Assembly: GCA_038087875.1 (NCBI GenBank)
Contig: JAXLNO010001347.1
Location: 1-64,000, forward strand
Source: Malacoraja senta
Taxonomy: Eukaryota
Length of the DNA stretch: 64,000 nt
Reading direction: 5' to 3'
Position numbers and translations under genes: made by a program. Below are positions 11,671 through 63,312 of this stretch, one piece after another (the first letter of the stretch is position 1; the number at the start of each line of letters is the position of its first letter). The notes beneath the pieces are model-generated. The model ran no database searches, was not told the origin of the DNA, and saw nothing but the letters and a program-made list of their open reading frames with translations.

Positions 11671-12179
11671 AAAAGCTCTTAATGCAGCCTTAACCATTGC
11701 TGTGAATTTTGCTTCAGGTCCTGAATGTGATATGAGTTTGTATGTTGGTTGCACCAAGCTTCAGTGCGTCCCTCAACATGTTTTCCTGCAGTCTGGAGTA
11801 GGTCAGGTGGCAACATTCCCTGATGGACCACACTTTGACATATCATTGCTTCATTCCTCAGCACAGTAACAGTGTGTGGGAGATGGGGCAATGTTCCTGT
11901 CCTTATAATACAGCCTTTGACCCACAGTGAGCAGCACCAGAACGGAAGTATTGCAATTGAAGTTTTATCTTTAGAAACAAAAGAGACACTTCCTCACTCT
12001 TACATTCAATGGCCTTAGCATTGAAGGCAAGCATACCATACGCCTTCTTCACTACCCTAACTACTTGTGCTGCCACTTTCCGTGAGCTATCAACGTGGAC
12101 TCCAAATGCACTGAAGATATGTGTCTCAAACTGGCTCAGTCTAAAATTCTATGTTTTTTTCCCACAGGGAATCCACAAA

Positions 12180-12267
12180 ATGAGGCCCAGGTTTTTCTGC
12201 AGCAGTTTGCCAGCTGGTTTGATGTTCGGTGTCTTTGTTTTCCTGCTTCGACCTGTTTCCACACAGA
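12180..12267 (+). CDS. CD4/LAG-3-like receptor: signal-peptide exon (exon starts 12168)
   Basis: Acceptor ttttttcccacag, ATG at 12180, MRPRFFCSSLPAGLMFGVFVFLLRPVSTQ, phase-1 donor A|gtaagt matching the D1 exon. Confidence 0.8.
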
Positions 12268-12429
12268 GTAAGTGCTTTCTCTTCACCGGTCACAATCACG
12301 TTGCTTTTCTTTATCATTCTCCGTGTAAACCCACACCCCATTGTTAATCTCTCTTTCCTCTCCACGTCCCACAAAACCACCCCATCCTTGCTGGAGCTCC
12401 ATTTCTGAGCCTCTCCCATTAGCTCCCTC

Positions 12430-13300
12430 CCTCCCCTTCCCCTGCACCAACATGGTCCTTTTCAAAGTCAGAAATGGCCCCCGGTGAGTAGTGTGACATA
12501 GTTGTCCACGCCATCCTCCCCAACATCTCCCCACCACAGTCCAGGTGGGTGGAACTGCCCTTGACCTATAGATCCAGTCGCAGCCCAAGAACTACCCGCA
12601 ATGTCTTCACTTCATGCTCCAGCACAGTTCCTTCGGGCACTCTCCGACAATCTACCATGGACCCCTCCTATTTCTCATCCTCAAGCTGCCCTTCGGTGAC
12701 ATCAGCTGACGTTTCACCGTTGCTTCCACAAGTTGACTGTGGACACCAGCTTGACCTCGCTAGCACCTCCCTCGACCCCTCCATAGTCTCCACATTCCCA
12801 GACTACACGTGGGACATCCAGGACTGCATGAGCAGAATTCCCCCCCAACTGAACACTTTGAATCCCAAAGCCATTGTCTTCAGTCCCACCACAACCCCTT
12901 TCTCCAGCCAGCAATTCCATTCCATTCAAATCCCAGAATATTTGGGGGTCAGACTGGTGATTCCGTGGCAGCAAACCAAACTCCAGGATGGTGTGTTGCC
13001 TCCCTGGTGCCAGGGTCCAGGATGTCTCCCAGCAGCTGTGGGACATTCTCAAGGACGAAGGTGAACAGCCAGAAGGCGGTGGGCACTTTGGCACAAATGG
13101 GATGGGTAGGAAAAGGGATGAGGTCTGATAGTTTCCCTACCACTGACATGAGTCACACTACATCAACAACTCTCCAACCCTTCCACAAACTCACCTGTGG
13201 CCAGAGAACACACACAGATCTTTATCAAGGCTCGCTGGGCTCGTCATCTCCAGATTCCTCCCGGGGTCATGTGTTAGTGAAGGTAGGAATAGGAAGAAAG
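12430..13300 (+). mobile_element. Degenerate L2-clade LINE fragments
   Basis: HQLDLASTSLDPSIVS...DIQDCMSR...QLN matches the L2 RT thumb region; rearranged and decayed. Confidence 0.6.
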
Positions 13301-13499
13301 GACAGATGAATGTATGGCTCAGGACTTGGTGCAGGGGGCAGAGATTCAGATTTAGATCTTTCTGCCATTGGCATCTCTTCTGGGGCAGACGTCACCTCTA
13401 CAAGAGGGATAGATTGTATCTGAAATGGAGGGGACCAATATGTTTGCAGGGAGGTGCACTAGTGTTACAAAGAGGGCTAAACTGGAGAGGCAGGGGGGT

Positions 13500-16634: not shown

Positions 16635-16976
16635 AAATCAGAAATCAGATTTATTTCTTGGATAATGGAGGCGACATTGTGTTAAAAGGACCGGACAATC
16701 CTGGGAGTGACACTGTTGTCTGGGAATGGGAACCACACTCAGGGCCGGGAAAACAGACAGTGGTAATTCTCCGCGTCCAGGGCAAGGGCATGTGGAGCAG
16801 ACAGTGGGGCGATGGCTGGGGAAACGCAGACAAGAACCAGGAGGTGGATGTGGATGACCGTACTGTTAATCTGGCAATAAAAAAACCCAGATTTAAATGG
16901 TCAGGATTGTTCACTTTGACCGAAACACATCCGAGGAACCAGATCCTGAAACGATATGAAATATATGGGATCAAAG
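16635..16976 (+). CDS. CD4/LAG-3-like receptor: D1 exon (V-like Ig domain lacking cysteines)
   Basis: ttccaacag| ... G|gtgagt, 342 nt, phase 1-1, open; IVLKGP..VVWEW..VNLAIK..SGLFTL..KRYEIYGIK strand pattern. Confidence 0.88.
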
Positions 16977-17863: not shown

Positions 17864-20800
17864 ATAGAAACATAGAAATTAGGTGCATGAGTAGGCCATT
17901 CGGCCCTTCGAGCCTGCACCGCCATTCAATATGATCATGGCTGATCATCCAACTCAGTATCCCGTACCTGCCTTCTCTCCATACCCTCTGATCCCTTTAG
18001 CCACAAGGGCCGCATCTAGCTCCCTCTTAAATATAGCCAATGAACTGGCCTCGACTACCCTCTGTGGCAGAGAGTTCCAGAGATTCACCACTCTCTGTGT
18101 GAAAAAAGTTCTTCTCATCTCGGTTTTAAAGGATTTCCCCATTATCCTTAAGCTGTGACCCCTTGTCCTGGACTTCCCCAACATCGGGAGCAATCTTCCT
18201 GCATCTAGCCTGTCCAACCCCTTAAGAATTTTGTAAGTTTCTATAAGATCCCCTCTCAATCTCCTAAATTCTAGAGAGTATAAACCAAGTCTATCCAGTC
18301 TTTCTTCATAAGACAGTCCTGACATCCCAGGAATCAGTCTGGTGAACCTTCTCTGCACTCCCTCTATGGCAATAATGTCCTTCCTCAGATTTGGAGACCA
18401 AAACTGTACGCAATACACCAAGACCCTGTACAACTGCAGTAGAACCTCCCTGCTCCTATACTCAAATCCTTTTGCTATGAAAGCTAACATACCATTCGCT
18501 TTCTTCACTGCCTGCTGCACCTGCATGCCTACTTTCAATGACTGGTGTACCATGACACCCAGGTCTCGCTGCATCTCCCCTTTTCCTAGTCGGCCACCAT
18601 TTAGAAAATAGTCTGCTTTCCTGTTTTTGCCACCAAAATGGATAACCTCACATTTATCCACATTATACTGCATCTGCCAAACATTTGCCCACTCACCCAG
18701 CCTATCCAAGTCACCTTGCAGTCTCCTAGCATCATCCTCACAGCTAACACTGCCCCCCAGCTTAGTGTCATCCGCAAACTTGGAGATATTGCCTTCAATT
18801 CCCTCATCCAGGTCATTAATATATATTGTAAATAGCTGGGGTCCCAGCACTGAGCCTTGCGGTACCCCACTAGTCACTGCCTGCCATTGTGAAAAGGACC
18901 CGTTTACTCCTACTCTTTGCTTCCTGTTTGCCAGCCAGTTTTCTATCCACATCAATACTGAACCCCCAATGCCATGTGCTTTAAGTTTGTATACTAATCT
19001 CTTATTTGGGACCTTGTCGAAAGTCTTCTGGAAGTCCAGATACACCACATCCACTGGTTCTCCCCTATCCACGCTACTAGTTACATCCTCGAAAAATTCT
19101 ATAAGATTCGTCAGACACGATTTACCTTTCGTAAATCCATGCTGACTTTGTCCAATGATTTCACCACTTTCCAAATGTGCTGCTATCCCATCTTTAATAA
19201 CTGACTCTAGCAGTTTCCCCACTACCGATGTTAGACTAACTGGTCTGTAATTCCCCGTTTTCTCTCTCCCTCCCTTCTTAAAAAGTGGGGTTACGTTTGC
19301 TACCCGCCAATCCTCAGGAACTACTCCAGAATCTAAAGAATTTTGAAAGATTATTACTAATGCATCCACTATTTCTGGAGCTACTTCCTTAAGTACTCTG
19401 GGATGCAGCCTATCTGGCCCTGGGGATTTATCGGCCTTTAATCCATTCAATTTACCCAAAACCACTTCCCGACTAACCTGGATTTCACTCAATTCCTCCA
19501 ACTCCTTTTACCCGCGGTCCCCTGCTATTTCCGGCAGATTATTTATGTCTTCCTTAGTGAAGACGGAACCAAAGTAGTTATTCAATTGGTCCGCCATATC
19601 CTTGTTCCCCATGATCAACTCACCTGTTTCTGACTGCAAGGGACCTACATTTGTTTTAACTAATCTCTTTCTTTTTACATATTTATAAAAAATTTTGCAG
19701 TCAGTTTTTATGTTCCCTGCCAGTTTTCTTTCATAATCTATTTTTCCTTTCCTAATTAAGCCCTTTGTCCTCCTCTGCTGGTCTCTGAATTTCTCCCAGT
19801 CCTCTGGTATGCTGCTTTTTCTGGCTAATTTGTACGCATCATCTTTCGCTTTGATACCATCCCTGATTTCCCTTGTTATCCACGGATGCACTACATTCCC
19901 TGATTTATTCTTTTGCCAAACTGGGATGAACAATTTTTGTAGTTCATCCATGCAGTCTTTAAATGTCTTCCATTGCATGTCCACCGTCAACCCTTTTAGA
20001 ATTAATTGCCAGTCAATCATGGCCAATTCATGTCTCATACCCTCAAAGTTACCTTTCTTTAAGTTCAGAAGCATTGTTTCTGAATTAACAATGTCACTCT
20101 CCATCCTAATGAAGAACTCAACCATATTATGGTCACTCTTGCCCAAGGGGGCACGTACAACAAGACTGCTAACTAACCCTTCCTCATTACTCAATACCCA
20201 GTCTAAAATAGCCTGCTCTCTCGTTGGTTCCTCTACATGTTGATTTAGATAACTATCCCGCATACATTCCAAGAAATCCTCTTCCTCAGCACCCCTGCCA
20301 ATTTGATTCACCCAATCTATATGTAGATTGAAGTCACCCATTATAACTGTTTTGCCTTTGTCGCACGCATTTCTAATTTCCTGTTTGATACCATCTCCAA
20401 CTTCACTACTACTGTTAGGTGGCCTGTACACAACACCCACCAGCGTTTTCTGCCCCTTAGTGTTTCGCAGCTCTACCCATACCGATTCCACATCCTCGAA
20501 CCTAATGTCCTTCCTTTCCATTGCGTTAATCTCCGCTCTAATCATCAATGCTACCCCACCTCCTTTTCCTTTCTCTCTATCCCTCCGGAATATTGAATAT
20601 CCCTGGATGTTCAGCTCCCAGCCTTGGTCACCCTGGAGCCATGTCTCCGTGATCCCAACTATTTCATAGTCATTAATAGCTATCTGCACATTCAACTCAT
20701 CCACCTTATTACGAATGCTCCTTGCATTGAGACACAAAGCCTTCAGGCTTGTTTTTACAACACTCTTACCCCTTATACAATTATGTTGAAAAGTGGCCCT

Positions 20801-20976
20801 TTTTGATTTTTGCCCTGGTTTTGTCTGTCTTCCACTTTTACTTTTCACCTTGCTACCTATTGCTTCTACCCTCATTTTACACTCCTCTGTCTCTACGCTC
20901 ACACATTTAAGAAACCCTTTCCCTTTAACTCCATCCTCCACTATCCCATTCGACACCCCACCCCCCTTATTCAGTT
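17864..20976 (-). mobile_element. Young CR1 LINE, near-intact ORF2 (APE+RT), nested in a + strand CR1 3' fragment (17738-17863 and 20977-21324)
   Basis: ORFs 19508..20956 and 17954..19501 share one frame, separated by a single TAA; 15-nt deletion of RPHLE. The host reads ttggacagg|...|atgcaggaag. Confidence 0.95.
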
Positions 20977-22122: not shown

Positions 22123-22389
22123 TTGAGGCAAGTCCACGGATCATTCTGCTGGGCAGTGACGTCACACTCAGCTGCACCATCTCCAGACTCTCAGATACAG
22201 TCAGTCTTCACTGGAGACCCATGGACTCATCCCAGCAGAACAGGAACAACACTGATCAGATCCGCCTGGATAACACGGTCTATCTGATGGTTCAACACGT
22301 TACAGTGGAGGATGGGAAGTATGTGTGTGATGTGCAGGAAAACGGAAACATTGTTCACACAAGTAACGGAGATTTTACTGTAGACAACT
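22123..22389 (+). CDS. CD4/LAG-3-like receptor: D2 exon (C2-type Ig)
   Basis: tttttcacag| ... T|gtgagt, 267 nt, phase 1-1; DVTLSCTIS..LHW..DGKYVCDV. Confidence 0.95.
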
Positions 22390-23811: not shown

Positions 23812-24147
23812 ATTTATATAATGGGAAATACACACTTTACCGCTCCAGCACAGATCACAGTGAACTTCACCTGGTTTGTTCTGGTTATATCCTTTCCCGT
23901 ACTGAGGGGATCTGGAAATCACGTCGCCTTCAACAACAGCAGAAAGTAATAGCATCTGCAAGACGTTCTCAGCCCATCAATGTCAATGGGACCGACTTCG
24001 GGAATCGACTGGTGACCTCTGGGAAACCCTTCGATGGCAAGGATTTCAGTGTGAGGATTGTCCCCGTTTTGTTTCAAGATGCCGGAGTTTACACATGTTT
24101 TCTGGATTTAAATCCATTTCCCACCATTGATCTAATCACAGTGAAAG
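23812..24147 (+). CDS. CD4/LAG-3-like receptor: D3 exon (V-set Ig)
   Basis: ctctgatacag| ... G|gtagga, 336 nt, phase 1-1; ELHLVCSG..GIW..FGNRL..DFSVRI..QDAGVYTC. Confidence 0.95.
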
Positions 24148-24225: not shown

Positions 24226-24486
24226 TCACAGCTGAACCGTCTGATGCAGTGACTGAGGGAGACACCGTTACCCTGACCTGCTCTGTGTCTCACGTCATTG
24301 AGTCAATGAGACTGGTTTGGATCAATGGCGATGGCAAAAGTGTTGCAGAAAAGACACTGACCAGGAAAGAGAAATCACAGAGTCTGGTTATTCAGAAAGC
24401 TGAGAGAGGCAGAGGGAACTGGATATGTGGTTTGTTTCATCAAGACCTGCCCCGGCTTTTTGTCCCGTACTATCAGGAGCCCCGTG
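24226..24486 (+). CDS. CD4/LAG-3-like receptor: D4 exon (C2-type Ig with WxC)
   Basis: gtttccacag| ... G|gtaagt, 261 nt, after a 78-nt intron; EGDTVTLTCSV..LVW..GNWICGL (CD4/LAG-3 WxC hallmark). Confidence 0.95.
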
Positions 24487-26695: not shown

Positions 26696-26803
26696 AGAAT
26701 TACACTTTTATATACATCATTGTTGGAATTATCGGGAGTCTGGCTGTTCTCATCGTCATTGTACTGGCAGTGGTGTGGTGTCAAAGAAGGCGCAAGCCTA
26801 CAG
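26696..26803 (+). CDS. CD4/LAG-3-like receptor: transmembrane exon
   Basis: ttttgacag| ... G|gtaaaa, 108 nt, phase 1-1; ENYTFIYIIVGIIGSLAVLIVIVLAVVWCQRRRKPT. Confidence 0.92.
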
Positions 26804-27512: not shown

Positions 27513-27567
27513 AAATTAATGTGACCCCAGTACCTGAGATGAGCCATGTTGCTGAATATATGTCTGA
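27513..27567 (+). CDS. CD4/LAG-3-like receptor: candidate cytoplasmic exon 1 (alternative donor at 27588 includes an in-frame TAG)
   Basis: ttattttccag| phase 1, EINVTPVPEMSHVAEYMS; both donors (GA|gtagga, AG|gtaaat) are phase 2. Confidence 0.5.
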
Positions 27568-28059
27568 GTAGGAAGACAAAGCAAGAAGGTAAATAGATGA
27601 CTCAGTCAATGAATCTCTAGTTGTAGAGGTGTTGTATTTGATGAAGCAACCTATTTCACATTTCACAGTTTTGTAACAAGAATGTGAGGAAGGGAACCTC
27701 AAGCACACAAACTAATTGATCAATTCAACAGTCTCTCTTGTGTCAATTCACCCCTCAGTCCCAATCTTCCTCATCCAACTGCAGGTCTTACTCTGCATTG
27801 GTCAATTGACTAATTTTCACTGGACTATCATGGTCAACCCATGAATGTTGAGACATCACCATGAACAACATATTCACACTCCTAATTTATTGTTGATCCT
27901 GATTAACAGCTTGGTTAGTGGCTCTCTAAAGAATGGACAACACTTGCCCTTTCAAAAGTCACCATCCCTTTCACAAAATATCATCTAGCATTTAATGCCT
28001 CCAATTCACTTTGCCACTAGTTCAGATTTTATTCTAAAGTGAAAATAACAACAACATTT

Positions 28060-30480: not shown

Positions 30481-32018
30481 ATCAACGTTTCGTATCATTG
30501 ACTTAAATCATCCTTTTTGAAATACAAATAAATTCTTTGTTTCCAACTTATTTCCACACAGAGGAAGGTATTCATTATGGATCCATCTCCTTCCAGCCAA
30601 AAGCAACTGGTGGTAAAATGACTTTATTTAAATATGTTTTAATCTTTTATCACAGTGAGGATTATTGGCACTGAGTAGTCTGAAACCCTGCTGTCTTTGG
30701 CCACTTTACAACAGCATCAGGCATTCCTGGGATAAAGTCCCTCACTCTGTCCGTGGAAATGAAGTGGGACAGTCAGCTGAGGCTCAGTTAGGAGCCGAAC
30801 CTTCTGTGGGTGGGTTCAGCCTCCCCAGCCTTCTCCGAGTGTGTTCTGGTTCCCTAAACTACAGGGAGTGTGGTCTGGTCCCCTAACCTACTCTAAGTGG
30901 GTTCTGGTCCCCTAGCCTACTCTGAATGGGTACAATAGCCACTCCAGAGATCCAACCAGTGACATCCAGGCTGCTGTTACAACACTGTTGTGCATTGTCG
31001 TTGGTGATGAGAAGTGAAACCAAGACACCATTTATGTCCATCTGAAGAACATTCTTCTGCACAACTCCTGACTGAGCTACAAGTGATCAGCACAATCTTC
31101 CTTGAATTATAAATTTTTGATATTGATTAGTAGGACTGGATGTTACAATCCCTAAGTTTCTTCACCACAACTGACACCCGATATTCTTGGGGGTGACCAC
31201 GAGGTGATTTTGCTACCAATCAGACACATCTTCAGTTGTGTACCTCAAAGTCACTGGGTGTTTCGGCCTTTTTATCACAAGACACCCTCAGTCAAGGCAG
31301 GCCCACCGCAGGGTGATCAGCCCTGGGTGTGTGTCTTATGGTTAGCCTCTAGATGGTCACGTGGCAGCCCAGACAGCATCTATTCTCTTCAGCCACAGCC
31401 AGTGACTGCTCCATTCTGCTTTTTTTACTTCCATCTTCCTCTTTACCGCTGACTGTGGCTGGTTGGGCTCTGGACTCGTGTCCGTTGGTGGGACAGTACT
31501 TGGTTGAGCTTCACCTGGGGTGCTGATACCCTGTGGACTGCGGTGGTTAACCTGCCACTGGGCTTCACTCAACTGATTTGGCCTACCTCTTAGAAGGTAA
31601 TGGTCAATGTGAGGCCCCACACCAAGCTCTCCCAGGCACTCTTCCCTGCCCTGGTGGATCTTGAGACCCTTCTCTGATGTTATCTTTTCCCAGCCACAGA
31701 TGCAGCTTCGTAGCTTATGTCCTGCCCGGGCTGCTGCTCTGTCAATTGCTGTGCTAGTTCACTTATTCATAGTCGATTCCTTCCGTAGCAATATAAGGGT
31801 GTCTTGTTCATGCTGACCATTCCTGCAGCTCACTGTAAATGCAGAGGTATGAGCATACAGATGACAGATGGGTTTTCTGGAATTCAATGTCTTGTTGATC
31901 TACTGTCAGGAAGAGCAAAATGTAGTAAGCTTTAGACTTTTATATTCCATTTGTCGTTTCCTTTGTCAACATAATCCACCAGTGTCATTTTTAATTGTGA
32001 TGTTTGCATTGATTACAG

Positions 32019-32062
32019 GCAGCAGCGATAATACACTGTCCTCCAATCAAACATCAGGCACT
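32019..32062 (+). CDS. CD4/LAG-3-like receptor: penultimate cytoplasmic exon (SSDNTLSSNQTSGT)
   Basis: gattacag| ... |gtaagt, 44 nt, phase 1-0. Confidence 0.68.
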
Positions 32063-32194: not shown

Positions 32195-32257
32195 AACCTT
32201 GTTTCTTCAAAGGAAGATGAGTCATCTGTCATCTATGCTGAAACAGTAAAAACATAA
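32195..32257 (+). CDS. CD4/LAG-3-like receptor: terminal coding exon (NLVSSKEDESSVIYAETVKT*)
   Basis: Acceptor tttcttcctctttcag, phase 0, ITIM-like VIYAET, TAA at 32255-32257. Confidence 0.72.
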   Translation, partial: NLVSSKEDESSVIYAETVKT

Positions 32258-36640: not shown

Positions 36641-38460
36641 TACACAAAAATGCTGGAGAAACTCAGCGGGTGCAGCAGCATCTATGGAGCGGAGGAAATA
36701 GGTAACGTTTCGGGCCGAAACCCTTCTTCAGACTGATAGGGGGTGGGGAGAAGAGAGGAAAAAAGGAAAAAGGCGGAGGAGGAGCCCGAGGGCTGGGGGA
36801 GGGGAGGAGACAACCAGAGGGCTGATGAAGGGGAGGGGACAGCAAGGGCTAGCAGAGTTGGGAGAATTCAATGTTCAAGCCCCCAGGATGTAGACTGCCC
36901 AAGCGGAATATGAGGTGCATTTCCTCCAATTTACGGTGTTGCTCGCTGTGGCCATGGAGGAGACCCAGGACAGAGAGGTCAGATACGGAATGGGAGGGGG
37001 AGTTGAAGTGCTGAGCCACCGGGAGTTCAGGTTGGTTATTGCGGACCGACCGGAGGTGTTTGGCGAAACGATCGCCAAGCCTCCGCTTGGTCTCACCGAT
37101 GTAGATCAGCTGGCATCTAGAGCAGCGAATGCAATAGATGAGGTTGGAGGAGATGCAGGTGAACCTCTGTCGCACCTGGAACGACTGCTTGGGTCCTTGA
37201 ATGGAGTGGAGGGGGGAAGTGAAGAGACAAGTGTTGCATCTCTTGCGGTTGCAAGGGAAAGTACCAGGGGAGGGGGTGGTATGGGAGGGAAGGGAAGAAT
37301 TGACAAGGGAGTTACGGAGGGAGTGGTCTTTGCGGAAGGCAGACATAGGGGGAGATGGGAAGATGTGGCGAGTGGTGGGGTCACGTTGGAGGTGGCGAAA
37401 CTGACGGAGGATCACTTGTTGTATGTGACGGCTGGTGGGGTGAAAGGTGAGGACTAGGGGGACTCTGCCTTTGTTGTGAGTGGGGGGATGGGGAGAGAGA
37501 GCAGTGTTGCGGGGTATGGCAGAGACCCTGGTGCGAGCCTCATCTATGGTGGAGGGGAACCCCCGTTCCCTGAAGAATGAGGACATTTCAGATGCCCTGG
37601 TGTGGAACGCCTCATCCTGGGAGCAGATGCGGCGTAGACGGAGGAATTGGGAGTGGGGGATGGAGTCCTTACAGGAAGCAGGGTGGGAAGAAGTGTAGTC
37701 CAGATAGCCATGGGAGTCGGTAGGTTTGTAGTGGATGTCGGTAAGGAGTCTATCACCTGCGATGGAGATAGTGAGGTCAAGGAATGGTAGGGAAGTGTCG
37801 GAAATGGTCCAGGTGTATTTGAGTGCCGGATGGAAGTTGGTGGTGAAGCGGATGAAGTCAGTCAGTTGTGTGTGGGTGCAGGATGTGGCACCAAAACAAT
37901 CATCGATGTAGCGGAGGTAGAGGTCGGGGATGGGGCCCTGGTACGCATTGAACAAGGATTGTTCTACGTACCCGACAAAGAGGCAGGCGTAGCTGGGGCC
38001 CATGCGTGTGCCCATAGCTACGCCTTGTATTTGGAGGAAATGGGAGGAGTCAAATGAAAAGTTATTAAGTGTAAGTACCAGCTCCGCTAGGCGGAGGAGG
38101 GTGTCAGTGGCCGGGTATAGATTGCTTCTATGGTCGAGGAAAAAACGGAGGGCTTCGAGACCATCCTGGTGGGGGATGGAGGTGTACAGTGACTGGACGT
38201 CCATGGTGAAGATGAGGGGGTGAGGGCCTAGAGAGTGGAATGCGCGGAGATGACGGAGAGTGTCTGAGGTGTCTTGAACATAGGTAGGGAGGGATTTAAC
38301 CAAGGGGGATAGGATGGAGTCGAGGTAGGTGGAGATGAGTTCGGTGGGGCAAGAACAGGCAGAGACAATGGGTCTACCGGGACAGTCAGGTTTGTGGATT
38401 TTGGGGAGAAGGTAAAAGCGGGCTGTGCGGGGCTGGGGAACGATGAGGTTTGAGGCTCGT
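36641..38460 (-). mobile_element. Penelope-like element, 5'-truncated (RT + GIY-YIG endonuclease + 3' terminal repeat)
   Basis: ORF 36849..38483: YLLPKIHK, GRPIVS, MDVQSLYT, GVAMGT, RYIDD, then NLIYCIRC..YIGETKR.L..RF..H. Confidence 0.95.
36700..36737 (-). ncRNA. Hammerhead-ribozyme-like core in the Penelope terminal repeat
   Basis: CUGAAGA-A-GGGU-UUCG-GCCC-GAAAC-GUU: conserved core boxes, UUCG-capped helix II, palindromic ACGU helix III. Confidence 0.65.
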
Positions 38461-38479
38461 TCGGCATGCATGCTCACTT

Positions 38480-38860
38480 CCAAAGCATGCTCACTTCATC
38501 AATAACAGTTTGGTACAGCAGTTTAGACACTCACTCCCGTAATAAACTACAGCGCATTGTCAACAAAGCATCCAAAATCATCAGCACTTCCCTCCCATCA
38601 ATAGAATCACTCAATCTCAAACGGTCTGTGTCAAGGGTGAATAAAATAATTTCTGATCCCTCCCACGCAGCTCAGCACATCTTCCACCTGCTGCCGTCAG
38701 GAAGGCGCTACAGCTCACTGCCCGCCAAAACATCATGACTTAAAAACAGTTTCTACCCATATGCAATTCGAAATCTGAACACGCTATGACAACATCACAT
38801 AGCTACCTCGTGCATGTACTGTATACTGTATGTTGTTGTGTTTTATGTTATGTTTGACAG
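38480..38860 (+). mobile_element. Rex1/Babar-clade LINE 3' fragment
   Basis: SSITVWY...KLQRIVNKASKII...DPSH...LLPSGRRY...KNSFYP.AIR. Confidence 0.85.
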
Positions 38861-50639: not shown

Positions 50640-53600
50640 CTGGTGACTATTTGACTTCAAGACACCGTCTAACTGTTCATAAAGTGTTGATAGCACTTTT
50701 ACACGCCTTAATCGTGAAAAGGATGGAGACAAGAAGGAAAGGAGGATCCCCAAAGAAGGAACTGGGGAAAGCCACAACCACAGCTGCAGCTTCTGATTCC
50801 AGCATCATAGAAGCAATATCGAAAAATGAATGATGAATTGAACAATGAGCTGAAAAATGAAATGAAAACAAGATTTGGCAGTTTGGAAGAAATGGTGAAA
50901 GGAGTTTCGACCAAATTGAAGGAAGTCCAAGGAAAACTGTCTTTGTTACAAGATGAACTTCGTGAACAAACGGATCAAATTGATATCTTGCGCACCCTGG
51001 GACAGGAGAGAGATTTGAAGATTGAAAAATTGGAACGGAGAATGAATGAAAACACTTCAGCAATACAAGTCTAAAAATATGGACTTAGAAAACAGAAGCC
51101 GTGGTTTGAATTGACGAATTGTTGGTTTGCCGGAAGGCCAAGAAGGAGATAACGTTATAAAATATGCTTCTAAAATGATATAGGAAACATTCAACATTGA
51201 GCAGAATGAAAACCTTCCGTTCCTGGATAAGGCACACAGGATTGGGAAGAGATCCGGTAATAAACCGAGACACTTGATCATACGGTTTCATTTTTTTCAA
51301 ATGAAGGAGAATATTCTCCAGGCAGCAAAAAAGTTTGGTGTGGTTGAATATGAAGGATGAGAGTTTCGGTTTGTCCCTGATTATAGTTACGAGCTTTTGG
51401 AAATAAGAAAGACTTTTTATAATGTAATGTCTGATTTGTATAAGAAAAACTGCGCCCAGCTTTATTATCACCAGCTAGATTGTGTATTCGGCTTTTCAAT
51501 GGTAACTTTCGATTTTTTAACAGTCCTCAAGACACCTCCAGCTTTCTGAAGAGCTACGAAGAGGAAGGGGAGTAATTGATAGCTGATTAAGTTATAATTG
51601 GAGATTTACTGTTCCTATTTTGACAACATTTTGTTTGGTAATGATTAAGAATTTAACTGGTCGAGTTGTTTTTCTTTTATATATATTCTTTTAAGAATTT
51701 CTTTGTTAATTCGTGTTCCCCTGTCGTTAGACAAACTAAGAGAATGCAGTTCTTGTTTTTCATATCTTGACCTTGGATAATAATAAGCCGCATTCCATGC
51801 CAGTCTGTATTTTTTTCTTCTTCTCTCTCAAAGAATGTGTTATGACGTAGTGGTTAAATATTATTATTTTTATGCTGAGCGCTGTTACTGGGAAAGATGG
51901 GATTGGGGAGGGGATTAGGTAGTTTGCTGACTGTCTTTTGGTCAGTTTGGGGTTCTACAGGGGTGGGAGGGGGTGGGAGGGGGGAAGGGGGAGGGGTCTT
52001 TTGTTCAAACTACCTGATTCCAAGTTTAGTGCTAAACAATGGCGATTTAATGCTACTTTGCTTCAAGACTTAAACTTTATTAAGTTTATGAAAGATCAGA
52101 TTGCTTTTTACTTCTTGACAAACTCTAATGAAGAGATATCCTATGGTATAGTTTGGGATGCTTTTAAGGCATATATTCGTGGACAAATTATTTCATACTC
52201 CGCGGGATTAAAAAAACAAACACAAAATGAAATACGCACATTGGCTGACGAGATTAAAGAAATTGATTAAAAATATTCAAAAGCTCCTAGTTTAGAGCTC
52301 TATAAGAATAGAGTTGAACTTCAATTGAGATATGATTTGTTATTAGTATCACCGATTGAGAACCAGTTACTTAAAACCAAAAGTTAATTTTATATAAATG
52401 GCGAAAAATCTGGTAAATTACTTGCTAATCAATTGAAAGCAGTGTCGGCCAAGCGTCAGAAGTGAGTAAACGGGCTGGTACAGTAACTGTAGACCATGAC
52501 GAAATTAATAAATCCTTTCAGCAATTTTATACCTCCCTATACCAATCAGATTTTCCTACTGATTCCAATATAATGCATGAGTTTTTAAAGAAACTGAACT
52601 TACCAAATTTACCATACAATTTACCATCTGTTGTTAGATGAACCCATCACGGAAGAAGAAATACAGAAAGCAATTTTTTCAATGAATTCTGGTAAAGCTC
52701 CCGGTTTAGATGGATTTACAGTAGAATTTTTAAAGTATTTCTCAAATGTATTGTCTCCATGGCTATGCAAGGTATTTAAAGAAGCCTTTTTAAGGAATAG
52801 ATTACCACAATCTTTTTATGAAGCTTCTATTTCTTTAATTTAAAAAAAAGATAAAGACCCTACTGAAGTGACATCATAGACCTATATCAATGTTAAATGT
52901 AGATTTTAAAATTCTTTCCAAAATATTACCTATGAGATTGGAAAAGATTTTACCGCAAATTATCTCTGAAGATCAGACAGGTTTTATTAAAAATCGTTAC
53001 TCATTCTTTAATGTTAGGAGATTAATAAATATTGTATATACAGCGTCTAATAAAACCCCAGAATGTGTCATCTCACTTGATGCCGAGAAGGCTATTGATA
53101 GAGTAGAATGGAATACTTATTCAATATACTTGAAAAAGTTAAGATTGGTCCAAAATGTATCTCTTGGATCAAACTGCTATATCTTATACCTCAGGCTTCT
53201 GTATTTACTGATAATCAGAGATCCCCTTTTTCAGGCTCTTTCAAGGTACTAGACAGGGCTGTCCCTTAAGTCCTTTACTATTTGATATTGCTTTGGAAAC
53301 TTTAGCCACTGCTATTAGGGAATCCCCTAATATTTTTGGTATTGTCCGCGGGATTAAGACACATAAGCTATCTCTTTATGCAGATGATCTGTTATTATTT
53401 ATTTCTAACCCTGAGAAATCTATTCCGGCAATAGTAGCATTACTTAATCAATTCAGTAGTTTTTCTGGTTATAAACTAAATCTTAGTAAGGGTGAGCTTT
53501 CCCATTAAATAATTTTGTTTCGAGTTATGGACAGTTTCCATTTAGATTGAGTACCGAAAGTTTTACTTATTTAGGTATTAAGATCACCAAGAAACACAAG

Positions 53601-55770
53601 GATTTATTTAAAGCTAATTTTATTCCTTTAATTGACCATATTAAACATCAGTTCACTAAATGGTTACCAATGTCCTTATCCTTAATTGGCCGAATCAATG
53701 CTATTAAAATGTTCATTTTACCTAAATTTCTGTATTTATTCAGACGATACCAATTTTTATTGCCAAATCTTTCTTTGATATTATAGACTCTAAAATTTCT
53801 TCATATATATGGCAGAATAAAAATCCCAGACTAGGTAAAAAATACCTACAGAAATCCAAAAAAGTTGGTGGTTTGGCATTGCCGAACCTTAGACTCTACT
53901 ATTGGGCAGTCAATGTTCGTTATTTAACATTTTGGACAAAAGATTTAGAAGATACCCAATGCCCTGGATGGATAAACCTAGAACGTGATTCCTTACAAGG
54001 GCTATAATTGGCTTCTATTCTAGGGACCTCGTTACCTTTTACAATTACGAGATTGAATAAATATATGACGAACCCAATAATAAGACATACGTTCCGAATA
54101 CGGTTTCAATTTCGTACGTTTTTTGGACTATCTGATTTTATCCAAATTTCTCTTCCAACCATCTAGTACTGATCAAGTTTTTTTGTTATGGAAGAGGAAG
54201 GGATTAGTAGCTTTTCGTGATTTGTTTTTGGAGGGTTGTTTTATGTCTTTCGAACAACTCTCCAATAAATATAACTTACCTAATTCACACTTTTTTAGAT
54301 ATTTACAAATTAGACAAAAGGAACTACCCCTTTTTCCGCTACCACATCAACCCGAAATTTTGGATTTTTTTTTACAGTTGAACCCTTATCAGAAAGGATT
54401 AATAACAACTATTCATGAGTTGATTTTAAAATTACAAATTTGATAAAATTAAGAATGACTGGGAAAGAGAACTCCAAATTTCTTTATCTATAGAGAAATG
54501 GGAGAGGATCAGCAACGACCAGGTTCAGGAACAGCTACTTCCCCACAGCCATCAGGCTATTAAACCTGGCTCGGACATAACACCGAACTTTACTAGCCAA
54601 TACTGTTATTTGCACTTTATCAGTATATTGACCATTGTGTATATATTTATAGAATGCCTTGTAGTAAATGCCTACTATGTTCTGTTGTGCTCAAGCAAAG
54701 CAAGAATTTCATTGTCCTACCAGGGACACATGACAATAAACTCACTTGACTTGACTTGGATCCTTCAATTAGTTAATACCTCTTCAATGTGTGCAAGACA
54801 CGCTCTGATACAATTCAAGGTGGTTCACAGAGCTCATATGTCAAAAGATAAGTTAGCTCGTTTTTATGGTCATATAAATCCTACCTGTGACAGATGTAAC
54901 TCTGAAGTGGCATCACTGACCCATATGTTTTGGTCCTGCCCCCTTTTGGAAAAATATTGGAAATAATTTTTTGATACTATTTCGGTAGTCTTAGGTATAG
55001 ATTTACAACCTCATCCTATTACTGCAATTTTTGGGTTACCAATGTTAGATTCTATTCATTTGTCCCACTCCGCCCATCGGTTGATTGCTTTTACCACATT
55101 AATTGCCAGATTTATTTTCTTTAAATGGAAAGATTCCAACCCTCCGACCACACTCCAGTGGTATTCTGAAATGATATCATGTTTAAATTTAGAAAAAATC
55201 AGAAGTGACATTGTTGAACCCTTGGTTAAATTTGATAAGACTTGGGGAATATTTATTGAACACTTTCATACAACATAAATTGATCGCTCTTTAACCGTTA
55301 TAAAAATTATTTTACTTTCATAGGGTGGAACGGACTTGACGATAAACAGACTTAAATTGTTGAATTTCTCAGTTCANNNNNNNNNNNNNNNNNNNNNNNN
55401 NNNNNNNNNNNNNNNNNNNNNNNNNNNNNNNNNNNNNNNNNNNNNNNNNNNNNNNNNNNNNNNNNNNNNNNNNNNNNNNNNNNNNNNNNNNNNNNNNNNN
55501 NNNNNNNNNNNNNTTTTTTTTACATTTATGTTTCCTTTTAAAGATTTAACTATATTTACATAGAGACCGAGAGGTCTATATTCATGTGTATTTTGACACT
55601 GGTCTCATATTAGGTTATACCTGTTATTAATGTGTTTAATCCGGATCCCTATGTATCAATACCATTGTTATATTTATCATTATTCTTTTTGCTCTGTTTT
55701 TTATGTTTTATTTTTGTTTTTGTTTTTTGGAAAAAAAACAATAAAAAGATTTTAAAAGAAAGGTACTGAA
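50640..55770 (+). mobile_element. Degenerate long L1-clade LINE (ORF1, EN largely deleted, RT, Cys domain), with a Rex insertion at ~54510-54770 and an N gap
   Basis: ORF1 coiled-coil and LRIVGLPEG-like region; WRFNATLL, GKAPGLDGF, SLDAEKAIDRVEW, LYADDLL, CDRC..SLTHMFWSC. Confidence 0.9.
55377..55513. other. Assembly gap (137 N)
   Basis: Run of N. Confidence 1.
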
Positions 55771-59157: not shown

Positions 59158-59265
59158 CTCTCCTCTTTTTTCTCCACCAAACAATTACTGCCAAGACAAT
59201 AGCCAGCAATATCAGCACACACACGGCAATAATGCCTATGTGCCTGTCTTTCTTCCCATTTCCTT
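59158..59265 (-). CDS. MHC class I-like gene: connecting peptide/transmembrane exon
   Basis: ttatttttcag| ... G|gtaaga, 108 nt, phase 1-1; EGNGKKDRHIGIIAVCVLILLAIVLAVIVWWRKKRR, in frame with the alpha3 exon; no class II Gly-zipper. Confidence 0.85.
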
Positions 59266-59834: not shown

Positions 59835-60065
59835 ATAGACACAAAATGCTGGAGTAACTGAGCGGAATAGGCAACATCTCTGGCGAACATGGACTCAGTC
59901 AGAAGGATCGTGACCCGAAACATCACCTATTTCTTTTCTCCAGAGATGCTGCCTGACCAGCTGAGTTATTCCAGCAATTTGTGTCCATCTTCGGTGTAAA
60001 CCAGCATTTGCAGTTTCTCCCTACACATGGACAGGTGACATTTCGTTTACGGACCCTTCTTCAAA
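59835..60065. repeat. Penelope terminal-repeat derivatives (further copies ~57640-57760, 59330-59445, 42240-42420, 8935-9000)
   Basis: acaaaatgctggagtaac.../gacccgaaacatcacc...gatgctgcctgacc motifs in alternating orientation. Confidence 0.7.
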
Positions 60066-61899
60066 CTTTGTTTGAGAAATTGATTAAAATTCTTTGAAAA
60101 TGCAACAGGAACCCGTAGACAATGTATATTTGAGCAGCAGTAGTTTGCAGGTGTGCACAGCCTAAAATTCAAAAACAAAATGATGGAAAAGCAGAATAGG
60201 TAACAAAATTGGAATGAGAAACAAAAGAAATACAATATATTGTAGAGATCCAAGCGTCGTGAACAAATCAATGTTTTTTTAAAGAAATACAGTTTTGGCC
60301 CACTCACGTTTAGTAAGGACTTGAGCAAAGTTCCTGCCGTTGTTATCGGGCACACCAGTTGACTGGCGATTAACTCATCACCAACTCCCACCAAAACCCT
60401 GTCATGTGATAGTCCCAGCTCCCCTGACGAGGGTTCTAGCAATAAGTGGCCTGACCACCAGATGTCGCCACAATATCTGGATTTTCATAAGATATCTGAT
60501 CAAGTGATGCAAAGGCACATGGCTTATGACATTGGGGGTAATAATTAGCATGAATGGAAAAACAATTAAGAGCAAGCAGAGAGTTGGCTTAAAGGAGTGT
60601 TCAGGTTGGGAAACTGCAACTGCAGGATGGGAATCAATGCAAGAAAGTGAACTACTTATCGTTAGTATTAAGAGCAGATGAAGGGACTGGTGGCGCTGTA
60701 GCCTAGATTGCTGATGATACATAGATAGGTTGAAAATTATGTTCTGGAGTATGTCAACAGTCTTCAGAGTGAAATACCAGATTCCTTAGTTGTGCATTGT
60801 TTGAGGGAATCTTCAAAAGTGAGCATTTGTGTAGGTTAGTGCAGCATACCTCGAATCAAACTACGATCGCTGTTTGTCAGGCAGTTGTTTTTCATTGCAG
60901 AAGCTGTGGCTTGCTTCAGGGAACTTACTTCATTAGGTTTAGTTTTATTAATGTCAGATGTTTCAAGATACAGTGCAAAGGTTTGTTTTGTATGCTATCC
61001 AAACAAATTAGATAATACTATAGATAAATAAAAAACTCAAAAACAATAGATAGAGCAAAGAGGAGGATACAGAGTACAGAATATAGTTCTCAGCGTTGTA
61101 ACACATCAGTTCCATAGACAATGTTCAATGTTCAATGAGGTTGAGGTGAATCGGGCATTAAACCTACATTATGGAAGGACCCTTCCGAAGCCTGTTAACA
61201 GGTGGAAAGGGGGTGTTCCTGAGTCTGGCAGTGCTTATTTTCAACTTTCAGTACCTGTTGCCTGATGGGAGCAGGAAGGAGGAATGTGAGAAAGGTGGGA
61301 TAAGTCTCGTTTTCCAAGGCAACCTGGTGTAGATTGGGTCAATAGTGGGAAGTCTGGGCTGTGTGATGATCTTTAACTCTTTGTATATTCTTGCAGTCTT
61401 GGGCAGTGCAGTTCCCAAATCAAGATGTGATGCAACCCAACAACATGCTTTCTCTAGCAGCATCTATAGATGTTTGCTGGAGTAACCAGAGACATGATGA
61501 ATATTCTCAGTCTCCTGAGGAAGTAGAGGTGTTGGTGTGCCTCCTTGGCTATGTGGCCAGTCCATGACCGAATATTGGATAAATTCATGCCAAGGAACAC
61601 GAAGCTCTCAATCATTTCCACTTCAGACTATTGATTCAGATTGGGGCATGTACTCCCCCAGTGCCTTGCTGTTCATCACATCATGAGGAAAGATTCATTT
61701 TTTATTTAAACATACCTTTCATGGATATCAGTTCCACCACTGAGAATCCCAAATACTCCTTCCTTGTATATTAGTTATTTATTTACTTACTTTTAATAAA
61801 TTTTCTGTTGACAAAGTCTTCTGCTCATGTGGAGAGTGGGTGCTGATTACGTGATTACTTAGAGCAACACCACTAAACAAAGAAAGTTTAAGCATCTTG

Positions 61900-62970
61900 G
61901 AATATGGGATGTACTACATGGGATGTAGCAATGTCACAAAATTTTGAGATTTTAAAAATCAAGTCTGCAATTTATCCCATCAGATAAAGCATAAAAAGAA
62001 GTTTAATTTGACACCTAATTCACTTTCATATCTTCTGTATTAAAAAAGTTTGGCAATTTTCATACTTGGAAATTAGCATCTTGTTCCCTATTGCTTTTCC
62101 ATTGACTTAACACAAAAGCTGTGATCAAGGACAGTCAAAAGCCCATAACTTTCTTAAAAATTAAGAGAACTTAATGAAATTTTCAGTTATTATAGATTGA
62201 AGCATTCTGAAACAAATATGAAACAATCTTACTTGGATGACCTGAAATTAAAGCATATAATTAGTTAGTTAACCAATTGTAGCTAATTACAAAATTCAAT
62301 TACTAGATCTAAATATCTATCCATTTCTTAAGAAAAAGTTAACATTTTTAAAAAGCCTAAGTGTCCAAATAACATTCACACAAGAATTCACAATAAAACA
62401 TTATTTTTAAATCTCAGTGTCATTAATTTATAGGCCAAATGGAAGGAATTTAGTGTTTAATTCCTGTAAATTAATGGCCATTTAAATCATCTTGCGAGTG
62501 GGATTTTGTGGAACGCGCTGGTTTGTAACGCTGCGGTTGCACTGAATTAAACCCCAACATCGTCAGGAAAAATACTGCCGGTTGGTATACTTAAATAATC
62601 ACATTTTCGCAACTTGAAATTTTTATTAAAGGCATCCTAAGAAGCAAGTTTATATGAAAAAATAAATGGTGTACCTTGCCTTGTCCCGTGCGTGAAATCC
62701 GTCCCCGTTGTCGGCGTTTACGGCATTTGAAGATGATTTTAATTTTACTCCATCAATTAAATTATAAAGCGCTAATATTAATAAACTTAATAAAACGGCA
62801 GTCGAAGCGATTTTTCTTCATCAACTATTTAGCCTGTTCAAGATCATTTAGAACAGGCTGCCGAAATATCGCATTTTAAACCCGCCCCCCCTCTCAAAAG
62901 CGCCAAAATCGCGCACACGGGCAGTGACAGAACTGCAGCGCTGCTGAAGGTAAGTTTTGTAACATACCTA
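61900..62970. repeat. Unclassified AT-rich dispersed element (possibly a non-autonomous DNA transposon) in the alpha3-TM intron
   Basis: Abrupt compositional block with CpG-rich right end; tgggatgtag motif also seen inverted at ~46860. No TIR pair confirmed. Confidence 0.3.
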
Positions 62971-63045
62971 GATGTAGTCACAATGATTAAAATGGAAACA
63001 ACAGAAGATAATGATTATCTATGAAAGAATATTTAACGTTCTTAC

Positions 63046-63312
63046 CCCAGATGATGGTCTTCCCACCGGGCAGGCTGCTGTGATCGACATGACAGGAATA
63101 CTGTTTCCAATCATATGGATCATACTCAAGGACAGACCTTAGATGATATGTTCCATCGTTGTTGGGTATGACCCCAGAAGATTTGGTCTCAGAGACATGT
63201 TGACCATTCTGCAACCAGCTGACTTTGATGGCCGGTGGGTAAAATCCAGACACAGTGCAGTACAGGACTGAATGATCATCAGGGCGGGCAGCGAGAGTGA
63301 CCTCAGGGGAAA
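63046..63312 (-). CDS. MHC class I-like gene: alpha3 (C1-set Ig) exon, probably non-classical
   Basis: tcttgtag| ... G|gtaag, 267 nt, phase 1-1; SPEVTL..LYCTVSGFYPPAIKVSWLQNG...GVIPNNDGTYHL...YSCHVDHSSL...W. Confidence 0.88.

What the first reader, a model, noticed from the sequence alone, without database searches (positions are those of the whole stretch)
12168..63312. CD4/LAG-3-family receptor gene tail-to-tail with an MHC class I-like gene: candidate linked receptor-ligand module
Seen: a V-C2-V-C2 receptor on + (12.2-32.3 kb) and MHC class I-like alpha3 and TM exons on - (59.2-63.3 kb), converging, with no other recognisable host gene between. Known: CD4 and LAG-3 bind MHC class II and normally sit in a conserved cluster away from class I genes; inhibitory receptors for class I carry Tyr/ITIM tails. 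Inference: this may be a cartilaginous-fish inhibitory CD4-related receptor inherited with a non-classical class I ligand (missing-self or co-segregating pair), possibly as a repeated gene-pair unit. The binding idea is speculation from linkage alone.
Basis: partly seen in the sequence, partly recalled or inferred. Interest (0 to 1): 0.85.

Follow-up and report, generated by a model that had tools for sequence, protein, structure and literature searches.

The report
Skate immune receptor beside class I-like gene
A skate gene for a four-domain, CD4-shaped immune receptor from a large unnamed fish receptor family does lie tail-to-tail, about 27 kb away, with an MHC class I-like gene, but nothing beyond this one adjacency suggests that the two work as a receptor-ligand pair.

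Summary
On the + strand (12180-32257) there is a signal peptide, four Ig domains (V-C2-V-C2), a transmembrane exon and ITIM-type tail exons. On the - strand there are a class I-type alpha3 exon (63312-63044) and a TM exon (59265-59158). Only retroelements and one assembly gap lie between them.

The receptor is not CD4 or LAG-3. It belongs to a large family, named only "uncharacterized protein" in databases, found in sharks, rays, skates and basal ray-finned fishes. The family has inhibitory (ITIM) and Lys-transmembrane forms. Its predicted fold is closest to LAG-3 and CD4.

This copy is the orthologue of thorny skate LOC116969960. Both carry a 2-bp deletion that puts a stop codon ahead of the ITIM exons.

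The receptor-ligand idea is not supported:
- In white shark, catshark and sawfish, the family members I recovered sit on chromosomes other than the MHC chromosome, which holds all class I genes there.
- Nine skate paralogue loci show no class I exon within 10 kb.
- Receptors are arrayed in tandem with each other.
- The linkage crosses an unresolved gap.

The scan had already found this receptor family several times on other DNA of this genome.

The parts
12180..12267 (+). Receptor exon 1: start codon and signal peptide (MRPRFFCSSLPAGLMFGVFVFLLRPVSTQ), ends in phase 1
   Evidence: 79-93% identical to the signal peptides of skate relatives.
16635..16976 (+). Receptor exon 2: D1, a V-like domain without the Cys pair (VWEWEPHSG, YEIYGIK)
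   Evidence: No Pfam hit. 78% identical to Leucoraja P0105 D1. Modelled as an Ig domain in the family model.
17954..20956 (-). LINE element with long endonuclease and reverse-transcriptase ORFs, inside receptor intron 2
   Evidence: Pfam RVT_1 at 4.8e-31 and Exo_endo_phos.
22123..22389 (+). Receptor exon 3: D2, a C2/I-type Ig domain (LSCTISRLSDTVSLHW ... YVCDV)
   Evidence: Pfam ig at 1.2e-5. 84-87% identical to skate relatives.
23812..24147 (+). Receptor exon 4: D3, a V-like Ig domain (an alternative acceptor lies at 23788)
   Evidence: Pfam V-set at 4e-4. This exon was the query that recovered the family: 54 proteins at E<=0.001.
24226..24486 (+). Receptor exon 5: D4, a C2 Ig domain with the WxC motif (NWICGLF)
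   Evidence: Pfam ig at 6.4e-6. W and C are nearly invariant or invariant in the family alignment A1.
26696..26803 (+). Receptor exon 6: uncharged transmembrane segment and stop-transfer RRRKPT, ends in phase 1
   Evidence: 77-79% identical to the best skate TM exons.
27513..27588 (+). Cytoplasmic exon t1 (INVTPVPEMSHVAEYMS). A 2-bp deletion gives TAG at 27569-27571. The exon is phase 1 at both ends, so skipping it would keep the frame.
   Evidence: DNA alignment A2. Seven of the 9 aligned copies are intact. The deletion is shared only with Amblyraja L001 copy a.
30562..30612 (+). Cytoplasmic exon t2 with an ITIM (IHYGSI). A 4-bp loss at the acceptor shifts the splice site 6 nt and stays in frame.
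   Evidence: tblastn with about 30 relatives; comparison with L001.
32019..32062 (+). Cytoplasmic exon t3a (GSSDNTLSSNQTSGT)
32195..32257 (+). Last exon t3 (NLVSSKEDESSVIYAETVKT, then stop). The second ITIM of the family (VIYAQI) is degenerate here (VIYAET).
36849..38483 (-). Penelope-like retroelement ORF (RT + GIY-YIG) in the intergenic stretch
51938..55278 (+). L1-like retroelement pieces. ORF2 ends about 100 bp before the gap.
55377..55513 (.). Assembly gap, intergenic; continuity across it is unknown
59158..59265 (-). Class I-like gene: connecting peptide, TM and RKKRR exon, phase 1 at both ends
63044..63312 (-). Class I-like gene: alpha3 (C1-set) exon, phase 1 at both ends. Alpha1 and alpha2 lie beyond the window end.

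Best explanation
Two unrelated immune multigene families happen to be neighbours here.

Gene 1 encodes a type I membrane receptor with a rod-like V-C2-V-C2 ectodomain shaped like CD4 and LAG-3. It belongs to an old family, unnamed in the databases, found in cartilaginous and basal ray-finned fishes. Members carry either a long tail with two ITIMs or a lysine in the membrane span with a short tail. I infer that the ITIM forms recruit SHP-type phosphatases after tyrosine phosphorylation. I also infer that the lysine forms pair with a DAP12- or FcR-gamma-type adaptor.

The window's copy is the orthologue of thorny skate LOC116969960. Its ectodomain and TM exons are open. A shared 2-bp deletion in the first tail exon stops translation before the ITIM exons unless that exon is skipped. 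This copy is therefore probably a signalling-impaired or decaying member. Its ligand is unknown.

Gene 2 is the 3' half of an MHC class I-type gene (alpha3 plus TM).

The 27-kb tail-to-tail adjacency is best read as co-location of rapidly duplicating immune genes in a repeat-rich, poorly assembled region, not as a conserved receptor-ligand module.
For: Family membership and range:
- The D3 exon finds 54 proteins, up to 77% identical.
- A full-length relative finds 91 proteins in 20 or so elasmobranch species, nearly all named 'uncharacterized'.
- Sturgeon, paddlefish, bichir, eel and tarpon also have members.

Paired tails: alignment A1 shows IHYxSI and VIYAQI tails in some members and a ...GYLLVKL... 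TM with a short tail in others.

Fold:
- The AlphaFold2 model has pLDDT 79, with long strands running through the D1-D2 and D3-D4 junctions.
- Foldseek against PDB ranks LAG-3 (5e-18) and CD4 (4e-17) first. Unrelated multi-Ig chains follow from about 2e-14.
- The top 16 Swiss-Prot models are all LAG-3 or CD4.

Orthology and frameshift:
- Window 22-35 kb is colinear with the Amblyraja scaffold at about 92% nucleotide identity.
- The 2-bp deletion is shared only with that copy.

Class I identity.

No conserved pairing:
- The MHC lies on white shark chr19, catshark chr13 and sawfish chr34, and those authors found all class I genes there.
- The receptor genes of those species sit on chromosomes of 179, 244 and 120 Mb. 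Their GeneID prefixes are absent from the MHC-chromosome tables.
- No alpha3 exon occurs in 332 kb around 11 relatives.
- L004 shows two receptor units about 11 kb apart with no class I gene between them.
Against: - The 10-kb flanks I could fetch do not reach the 27-31 kb spacing seen here. Adjacency in the thorny skate orthologous scaffold was therefore not tested.
- An unchecked first-stage note from this scan (s1-140410) reports another piece of this genome with a class I alpha3-like exon next to exons of this receptor family. Some interspersion in skates is therefore possible.
- The published 'all class I genes in the MHC' result did not include skates.
- dN/dS of 1 or more in the ectodomain is what a ligand-driven arms race would give, though relaxed constraint gives it too.
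- Human G6F, a possible relative, is MHC-encoded. An ancient MHC link is therefore not excluded.
Confidence: 0.7

Rival explanations
1. One reading: the receptor and the class I-like gene are a co-inherited receptor-ligand (missing-self type) pair, kept together by selection, possibly as a repeated unit.
For: - Convergent neighbours with no host gene between them.
- The family has paired inhibitory and activating forms, as KIR, LILR and Ly49 do.
- The ectodomain evolves fast.
- The fold relatives CD4 and LAG-3 bind MHC molecules (established knowledge; PMC10768021).
Against: - The family members recovered in three other elasmobranchs are not on the MHC chromosome.
- No class I exon lies near nine skate paralogues.
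- The receptors form receptor-only tandem arrays.
- This copy's inhibitory tail sits behind a stop codon.
- The linkage crosses a gap.
- There are no binding or expression data.
Confidence: 0.05
2. Ancient synteny: the family is the fish counterpart of MHC-encoded G6F, and this copy marks a remnant of an original linkage between G6F-type receptors and the MHC.
For: - The ESM Atlas places 'g6f-like' clusters among the nearest named neighbours, beside CD4 and LAG-3.
- Sturgeon and bichir relatives end in YxN motifs (IYDNV, IYENC/IYENV). YxN is the motif reported for G6f-like (PMC3528668).
- Human G6F is MHC-encoded (title of Ohashi 2010, cited in PMC3528668).
- In thorny skate, MHC genes and this orthologue are both on unplaced scaffolds.
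Against: - No alignment-based test against a G6F or G6f-like sequence was possible here.
- No g6f entry appears in the shark and sawfish MHC-chromosome tables.
- The family members recovered from those species lie on other chromosomes.
- Sturgeon and tarpon relatives have non-MHC neighbours: an M1 aminopeptidase, a TFR/PSMA-like gene and an E2 enzyme.
Confidence: 0.15
3. Assembly artefact: the two genes are joined only by a wrong scaffold join at the gap (55377-55513) and are not neighbours in the animal.
For: - The gap sits in repeat-rich DNA just after an L1 3' end.
- The flanks share nothing that shows continuity.
- The thorny skate orthologue lies on a small unplaced scaffold, so the region is hard to assemble.
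Against: A short estimated gap inside a scaffold is usually spanned by long reads or read pairs. Nothing in the sequence points to a misjoin.
Confidence: 0.1

Closest known systems
CD4 and LAG-3 (including the shark genes described in PMC10768021)
   Same: - Type I membrane proteins with a V-C2-V-C2 ectodomain.
- One exon per domain, with D1 unsplit as in shark CD4 and LAG-3.
- WxC motif in D4.
- Best structural matches over all four domains.
- The family includes inhibitory tails, as LAG-3 does.
   Different: - Sequence similarity is at general IgSF level. By profile search, pIgR and CEA score as well as LAG-3. No CD4-specific Pfam family is hit.
- D2 has YxC, not WxC.
- D1 lacks the Cys pair.
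- The tail has classical ITIMs, not Cx(C/H) or (F/Y)xxL(D/E).
- It is a multigene family with Lys-TM partners.
- It lies on a different chromosome from catshark cd4/lag3.
G6f-like (teleost thrombocyte collagen receptor) and MHC-encoded G6F
   Same: - Four Ig-like domains, a single TM and tyrosine motifs in the tail (PMC3528668).
- Among the nearest named clusters in the ESM Atlas.
- YxN motifs in the sturgeon and bichir relatives.
   Different: - G6f-like carries an ITAM plus YxN and is reported as a single gene with a haemostatic role.
- This gene has ITIM exons and belongs to an expanded paired family.
- Homology was not tested by alignment here.
Paired Ig-like receptor families that read MHC class I (KIR, LILR/PIR, CHIR; NITR in bony fish)
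   Same: - Multigene tandem arrays.
- ITIM forms alongside charged-TM forms with similar ectodomains.
- Fast ectodomain evolution.
   Different: - Different domain types and no specific sequence relation.
- No ligand is known.
- In mammals, KIR and LILR genes are not linked to their MHC ligands (general knowledge). Linkage is therefore neither expected nor required.
Elasmobranch non-classical MHC class I lineages (UBA, UDA, UEA; PMC10751288)
   Same: A class I-type alpha3 exon followed by a CP/TM exon. It is roughly 60% identical to the alpha3 of solved chain 9ch4_A.
   Different: - The lineage could not be assigned, because only alpha3 and TM are in the window.
- Those lineages were mapped inside the MHC in two sharks and a sawfish. 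Skates were not analysed.
MDIR (modular domain immune-type receptors of the clearnose skate)
   Same: A skate multigene Ig receptor family with activating and inhibitory members.
   Different: MDIR domains are described as CD300/TREM/pIgR-like V domains (PMC3031540). The present family's model matches CD4 and LAG-3 first. No MDIR sequence was available for a direct comparison.

Membership tests
CD4/LAG-3 family | V-C2-V-C2 ectodomain with rigid V-C2 pairs | tested here: met
   Exon and domain order. The AF2 model has continuous strands through both V-C2 junctions. LAG-3 and CD4 are the top Foldseek hits.
CD4/LAG-3 family | WxC motif in strand F of both D2 and D4 (PMC10768021) | tested here: not met
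   D4 has NWIC, and the family has nearly invariant W and invariant C. D2 has YVC, and the family has LYxCEV. The motif is present in one of the two domains only.
CD4 | Cx(C/H) LCK-binding motif in the cytoplasmic tail | tested here: not met
   The tail exons contain no such motif. The CLCLCC string at 26.9 kb is intron read-through after the TM exon donor, and no relative uses it.
LAG-3 | (F/Y)xxL(D/E) motif in a tail encoded by a single exon | tested here: not met
   The tail is encoded by at least four small exons and carries IHYGSI and VIYAET.
CD4/LAG-3 family | Genomic position in the LAG3-CD4 tandem of the MHC-paralogous (chr12-type) region | tested here: not met
   Catshark cd4 and lag3 lie on chr16 at 86.8-87.1 Mb. 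Catshark family members LOC119965405/7 lie on a 244-Mb chromosome. The window's own position is unknown.
Paired inhibitory/activating Ig receptor family | Similar ectodomains combined either with ITIM tails or with a charged TM residue and a short tail | tested here: met
   Alignment A1: for example P0102, P0099 and P0110 have IHYGSI plus VIYAQI, while P0009, P0085 and P0088 have ..GYLLVKL.. and short tails.
Paired inhibitory/activating Ig receptor family | A functional ITIM tail in this copy | tested here: inconclusive
   The ITIM exon is open, but it lies downstream of a frameshift stop in exon t1. It would be translated only if t1 (phase 1/1) is skipped. No transcript data are available.
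MHC class I | Membrane-proximal C1-set alpha3 domain followed by a CP/TM exon | tested here: met
MHC class I | Alpha1 and alpha2 exons forming the ligand-binding groove | not testable with these tools
   They would lie beyond position 64000. No such exon is seen at 63313-64000.
G6F / G6f-like | Four Ig domains, with YxN and (in fish) an ITAM in the tail | tested here: not met
   Four Ig domains are present, but the tail has ITIM exons and no YxN or ITAM. Some bony-fish relatives do have YxN. Sequence homology to G6F was not tested.

The most novel reading that the evidence does not exclude
In skates (not in sharks or sawfish), copies of this CD4/LAG-3-shaped paired receptor family have moved in among expanded class I-like genes. 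Some receptor and class I neighbours then co-evolve as an MHC-linked recognition system. That would be a fish parallel to NK receptor-MHC linkage and a link between the CD4/LAG-3/G6F fold and class I recognition.
Probability: 0.07. Interest if true: 0.8.

Novelty: new variant of a known kind. Interest (0 to 1): 0.35.

Why it matters
The receptor family is the more interesting part. It is an ancient set of paired inhibitory/activating receptors that I found only as unnamed database entries, and it is built on the CD4/LAG-3 fold. This shows that the fold was used for a whole multigene recognition system early in jawed vertebrates.

The specific claim of this finding is a receptor physically tied to its class I ligand. 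If true, it would bear on the old idea that NK-type receptors and MHC ligands began linked. The present data do not support it: it is one adjacency, across a gap, next to a copy whose inhibitory tail is broken.

Tried and rejected
- A word-index protein search with the alpha3 exon found no candidates. No full-length class I relatives could therefore be collected, and LOC-number or contig-level linkage could not be tested from the class I side.
- A literature search for PDB code 9CH4 gave only chance matches. The source species and lineage of the best alpha3 match stay unknown.
- PDB sequence searches with single receptor exons gave only weak hits: LAG-3 D2 at E 0.27, and nothing for D1.
- The profile search against PDB did not separate CD4/LAG-3 from pIgR or CEA.
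- One contig look-up failed: P0127 is not on record.
- A 0.6-0.7 kb match between the class I intron (61.9-62.6 kb) and DNA 6 kb downstream of a little skate receptor (L003) looked like shared synteny. It has no flanking homology and no class I exons beside it, so I read it as a repeat.
- The juxtamembrane tail exon of Rhinoraja P0079 (GNQRQKAPRSK...IQQMA) has no counterpart in the window. Only a short GNQETK-like piece at about 27.2 kb is present, and I did not place it in the gene model.
- The MDIR reading was rejected on the described domain type only.

Full report
WHAT IS THERE

The window is repeat-rich vertebrate DNA. Its genes are closest to those of skates: about 92% nucleotide identity, introns included, to thorny skate (Amblyraja radiata), and 87-91% to little skate and Rhinoraja.

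On the + strand six exons join in phase 1 into an open frame of 467 residues:
- signal peptide, 12180-12267
- D1, 16635-16976
- D2, 22123-22389
- D3, 23812-24147
- D4, 24226-24486
- an uncharged transmembrane exon, 26696-26803

D2, D3 and D4 match Pfam Ig models. D1 matches none, and it lacks the usual cysteine pair. Small cytoplasmic exons were found by tblastn with relatives: 27513-27588, 30562-30612 (IHYGSI, a canonical ITIM), 32019-32062 and 32195-32257 (…SVIYAETVKT, then stop).

On the - strand, 63312-63044 is a clean phase-1/phase-1 exon encoding a C1-set domain (Pfam 1.8e-16; sequence). Its best solved relative is residues 182-268 of the 268-residue chain 9ch4_A, at E 1.4e-32 with roughly 60% identity over 87 residues. 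MR1, CD1 and classical class I chains follow. A C1 domain at that position after about 180 residues is the class I heavy-chain layout. The exon 59265-59158 continues in phase and encodes a short connecting peptide, a hydrophobic span and RKKRR. The alpha1 and alpha2 exons would lie beyond the window end.

Between the two genes I found only retroelements: Penelope-like RT+GIY-YIG, L1-like RT and an env-like remnant.

THE GAP

The N run (55377-55513) lies in the intergenic stretch, about 100 bp after the stop of an L1 ORF2. It interrupts no exon of either gene. The flanks have no second copy in the window or in the fetched loci that would show whether they are continuous. The adjacency of the two genes therefore depends on the scaffold join, which I could not test.

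WHAT THE RECEPTOR IS

A full scan of 1.84 billion cluster representatives with the D3 exon found 54 proteins, up to 77% identical, several of them with two to six copies of the domain. A word-index search with a full-length relative gave 91 proteins from some twenty shark, ray, skate and sawfish species. Nearly all are called "uncharacterized protein", and a few "obscurin-like", "VCAM-like" or "CD276 homolog". More distant members occur in sturgeons, paddlefish, bichir, eels and tarpon.

The 26-sequence alignment A1 shows one conserved four-domain plan. It has two kinds of C-terminus:
- an uncharged TM followed by a long tail with IHY(G/A)SI and VIYAQI (two ITIMs, conserved from skates to tarpon);
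- a TM of the type …GYLLVKL… with a lysine, followed by a short tail.

This is the pattern of paired inhibitory and activating receptors. The signalling steps are inferred from the motifs, not shown: phosphatase recruitment by the ITIMs, and adaptor pairing through the lysine.

RELATION TO CD4 AND LAG-3

By sequence the relation is weak.
- Pfam gives only generic Ig families and none of the CD4-specific ones.
- A single member against PDB gives NCAM2, JAML, LAG-3 and CD4 at E 6e-4 to 0.02.
- The family profile gives pIgR 7e-13, CEA 8e-13, LAG-3 4e-12 and CD4 2e-10.

By structure the relation is clear.
- The AlphaFold2 model built on A1 (pLDDT 79, pTM 0.75) has long strands running through the D1-D2 and D3-D4 junctions.
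- Foldseek ranks LAG-3 (5e-18) and CD4 (4e-17) first in the PDB, with unrelated multi-Ig chains following from about 2e-14.
- The first 16 Swiss-Prot models are all LAG-3 or CD4.
- The ESM Atlas lists "g6f-like", CD4 and LAG-3 among the nearest named clusters.

Of the family-defining features given by Takizawa et al. (PMC10768021), the V-C2-V-C2 plan and the WxC motif of D4 are met. The following are not met:
- WxC in D2
- the Cx(C/H) or (F/Y)xxL(D/E) tail motifs
- the genomic position: catshark cd4/lag3 on chr16, family members on a 244-Mb chromosome

The gene is thus CD4/LAG-3-like in build, but it is not CD4, not LAG-3, and not shown to be their close kin.

THIS COPY IN PARTICULAR

From the D2 exon to about 3 kb past the last exon, the window is colinear at about 92% with thorny skate scaffold JAAGWR010000503.1 (LOC116969960, P0005). 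It is colinear at about 91% with a second thorny skate paralogue.

In cytoplasmic exon t1 the window lacks two bases (…ATGTC--TGAGTAG…) that are present in seven of the nine aligned copies. The result is …AEYMSE followed by TAG at 27569-27571. The same deletion is present only in the LOC116969960 copy. This marks the two as orthologues and shows that the lesion is real and older than the split of the two skates.

In intact relatives this exon precedes the ITIM exons (P0079 mapped on its locus). It is phase 1 at both ends, so skipping it would restore an ITIM tail. Without transcripts this stays open. The last ITIM is degenerate in both species (VIYAET and VIYAAT, against VIYAQI in the family).

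The 5' part of the gene (signal peptide and D1) resembles little skate LOC129701498: 78% identity in D1, against 50% to the thorny skate orthologue's D1. This suggests exchange between paralogues.

Between the window and its closest copies, D2-D4 show many more replacement than silent changes: 49 against 7 versus the orthologue, with dN/dS about 1.5-4 per exon. This fits either diversifying selection or relaxed constraint.

IS THE ADJACENCY MORE THAN AN ACCIDENT?

(a) Veríssimo et al. (PMC10751288) report that in white shark, catshark and sawfish all class I genes lie in the MHC, on chr19, chr13 and chr34 respectively. The receptor genes recovered from these species lie on chromosomes of 179, 244 and 120 Mb. 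Their GeneID prefixes do not occur in the gene tables of the MHC chromosomes. The stored table is truncated, so the sawfish part is less certain.

(b) I fetched 11 loci around relatives, 332 kb in all. Nine are from three skate species, each covering the gene plus 10 kb on each side. None contains an alpha3-like or class I TM exon.

(c) Where two receptor units are seen together (L004; also L002 and L008), they follow each other at about 11 kb with no class I gene between them.

(d) Sturgeon and tarpon relatives have unrelated neighbours.

Limits:
- The flanks do not reach the 27-31 kb spacing seen here.
- The orthologous thorny skate scaffold could not be read that far.
- Skates were not in the published MHC maps.
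- An unchecked first-stage note from this scan reports another class I alpha3 exon beside exons of this family elsewhere in this genome.

VERDICT

The most likely reading (about 0.7) is that a tail-damaged member of a large CD4/LAG-3-shaped paired receptor family lies next to a class I-like gene in a region where immune multigene families and retroelements accumulate. Lesser possibilities are a remnant of an old G6F-type/MHC linkage (0.15), a misjoin at the gap (0.1) and a true co-evolving pair (0.05).

Other agents of this scan had already met the receptor family on other DNA of this genome and reached the same description. I re-derived that description independently here.

Noticed in passing
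window 27513-27588; L001:23006-23145: A 2-bp deletion in the first cytoplasmic exon creates a stop codon ahead of the ITIM exons. It is shared by the window and thorny skate LOC116969960, but not by seven other skate copies. The NCBI model for that gene avoids the exon and ends in a different short tail.
   Followed up: yes
window 12180-17000 versus 22000-35400: The gene looks mosaic. The signal peptide, D1 and their introns are closest to little skate LOC129701498 (D1 78% identical). Everything from D2 onward is closest to thorny skate LOC116969960, whose own D1 is only 50% identical. This suggests recombination or gene conversion between paralogues.
   Followed up: partly
window 22123-24486 compared with L001, L009, L008: Replacement changes far outnumber silent ones in the D2, D3 and D4 exons (for example 14:1, 24:5 and 11:1 against the orthologue), while the flanking introns are 92-94% identical. 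This indicates either diversifying selection or loss of constraint.
   Followed up: partly
L001 18.4-18.9 kb and 22.7-23.2 kb; L009 15.4-15.9 kb and 19.7 kb; L008 12.1-12.5 kb and 16.7-17.2 kb: The paralogue loci in thorny and little skate each carry two copies of the small tail exon block (the GNQ piece plus exon t1). One copy lies just after D4, before the TM exon. Some NCBI models splice D4 directly to it, giving TM-less products. These could be secreted isoforms or annotation artefacts.
   Followed up: no
P0028, P0146, P0052 (sturgeon, paddlefish, bichir relatives): These bony-fish members end in YxN motifs (IYDNV..IYENC, IYENV) instead of ITIMs. YxN is the Grb2-type motif reported for G6f-like. 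A second sturgeon group (P0148) keeps the ITIM-type tail. This may tie the family to G6F/G6f-like.
   Followed up: no
L006 (Acipenser ruthenus OV754670.1, 3.26-3.29 Mb): The sturgeon relative lies between an ERAP-type M1 aminopeptidase gene (Peptidase_M1 plus ERAP1_C) and a transferrin-receptor/PSMA-like gene.
   Followed up: no
window 17954-20956 (-): A LINE with long open endonuclease (482 aa) and reverse transcriptase (515 aa) ORFs sits in receptor intron 2. A near copy lies at 5.6-8.2 kb of the window. It looks like a young, possibly active element.
   Followed up: no
window 39141-39569 (+): An ORF whose end resembles a retroviral envelope TM subunit tail (hydrophobic span, then CCIIPCVRGL...). 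It has no Pfam hit and is probably an endogenous retrovirus remnant.
   Followed up: no
window 61923-62645 (class I intron) and L003:23389-24111: A segment of about 0.7 kb, 85-91% identical, is found once in the window and once 6 kb downstream of a little skate receptor gene, with no flanking homology. It is probably a low-copy repeat.
   Followed up: partly
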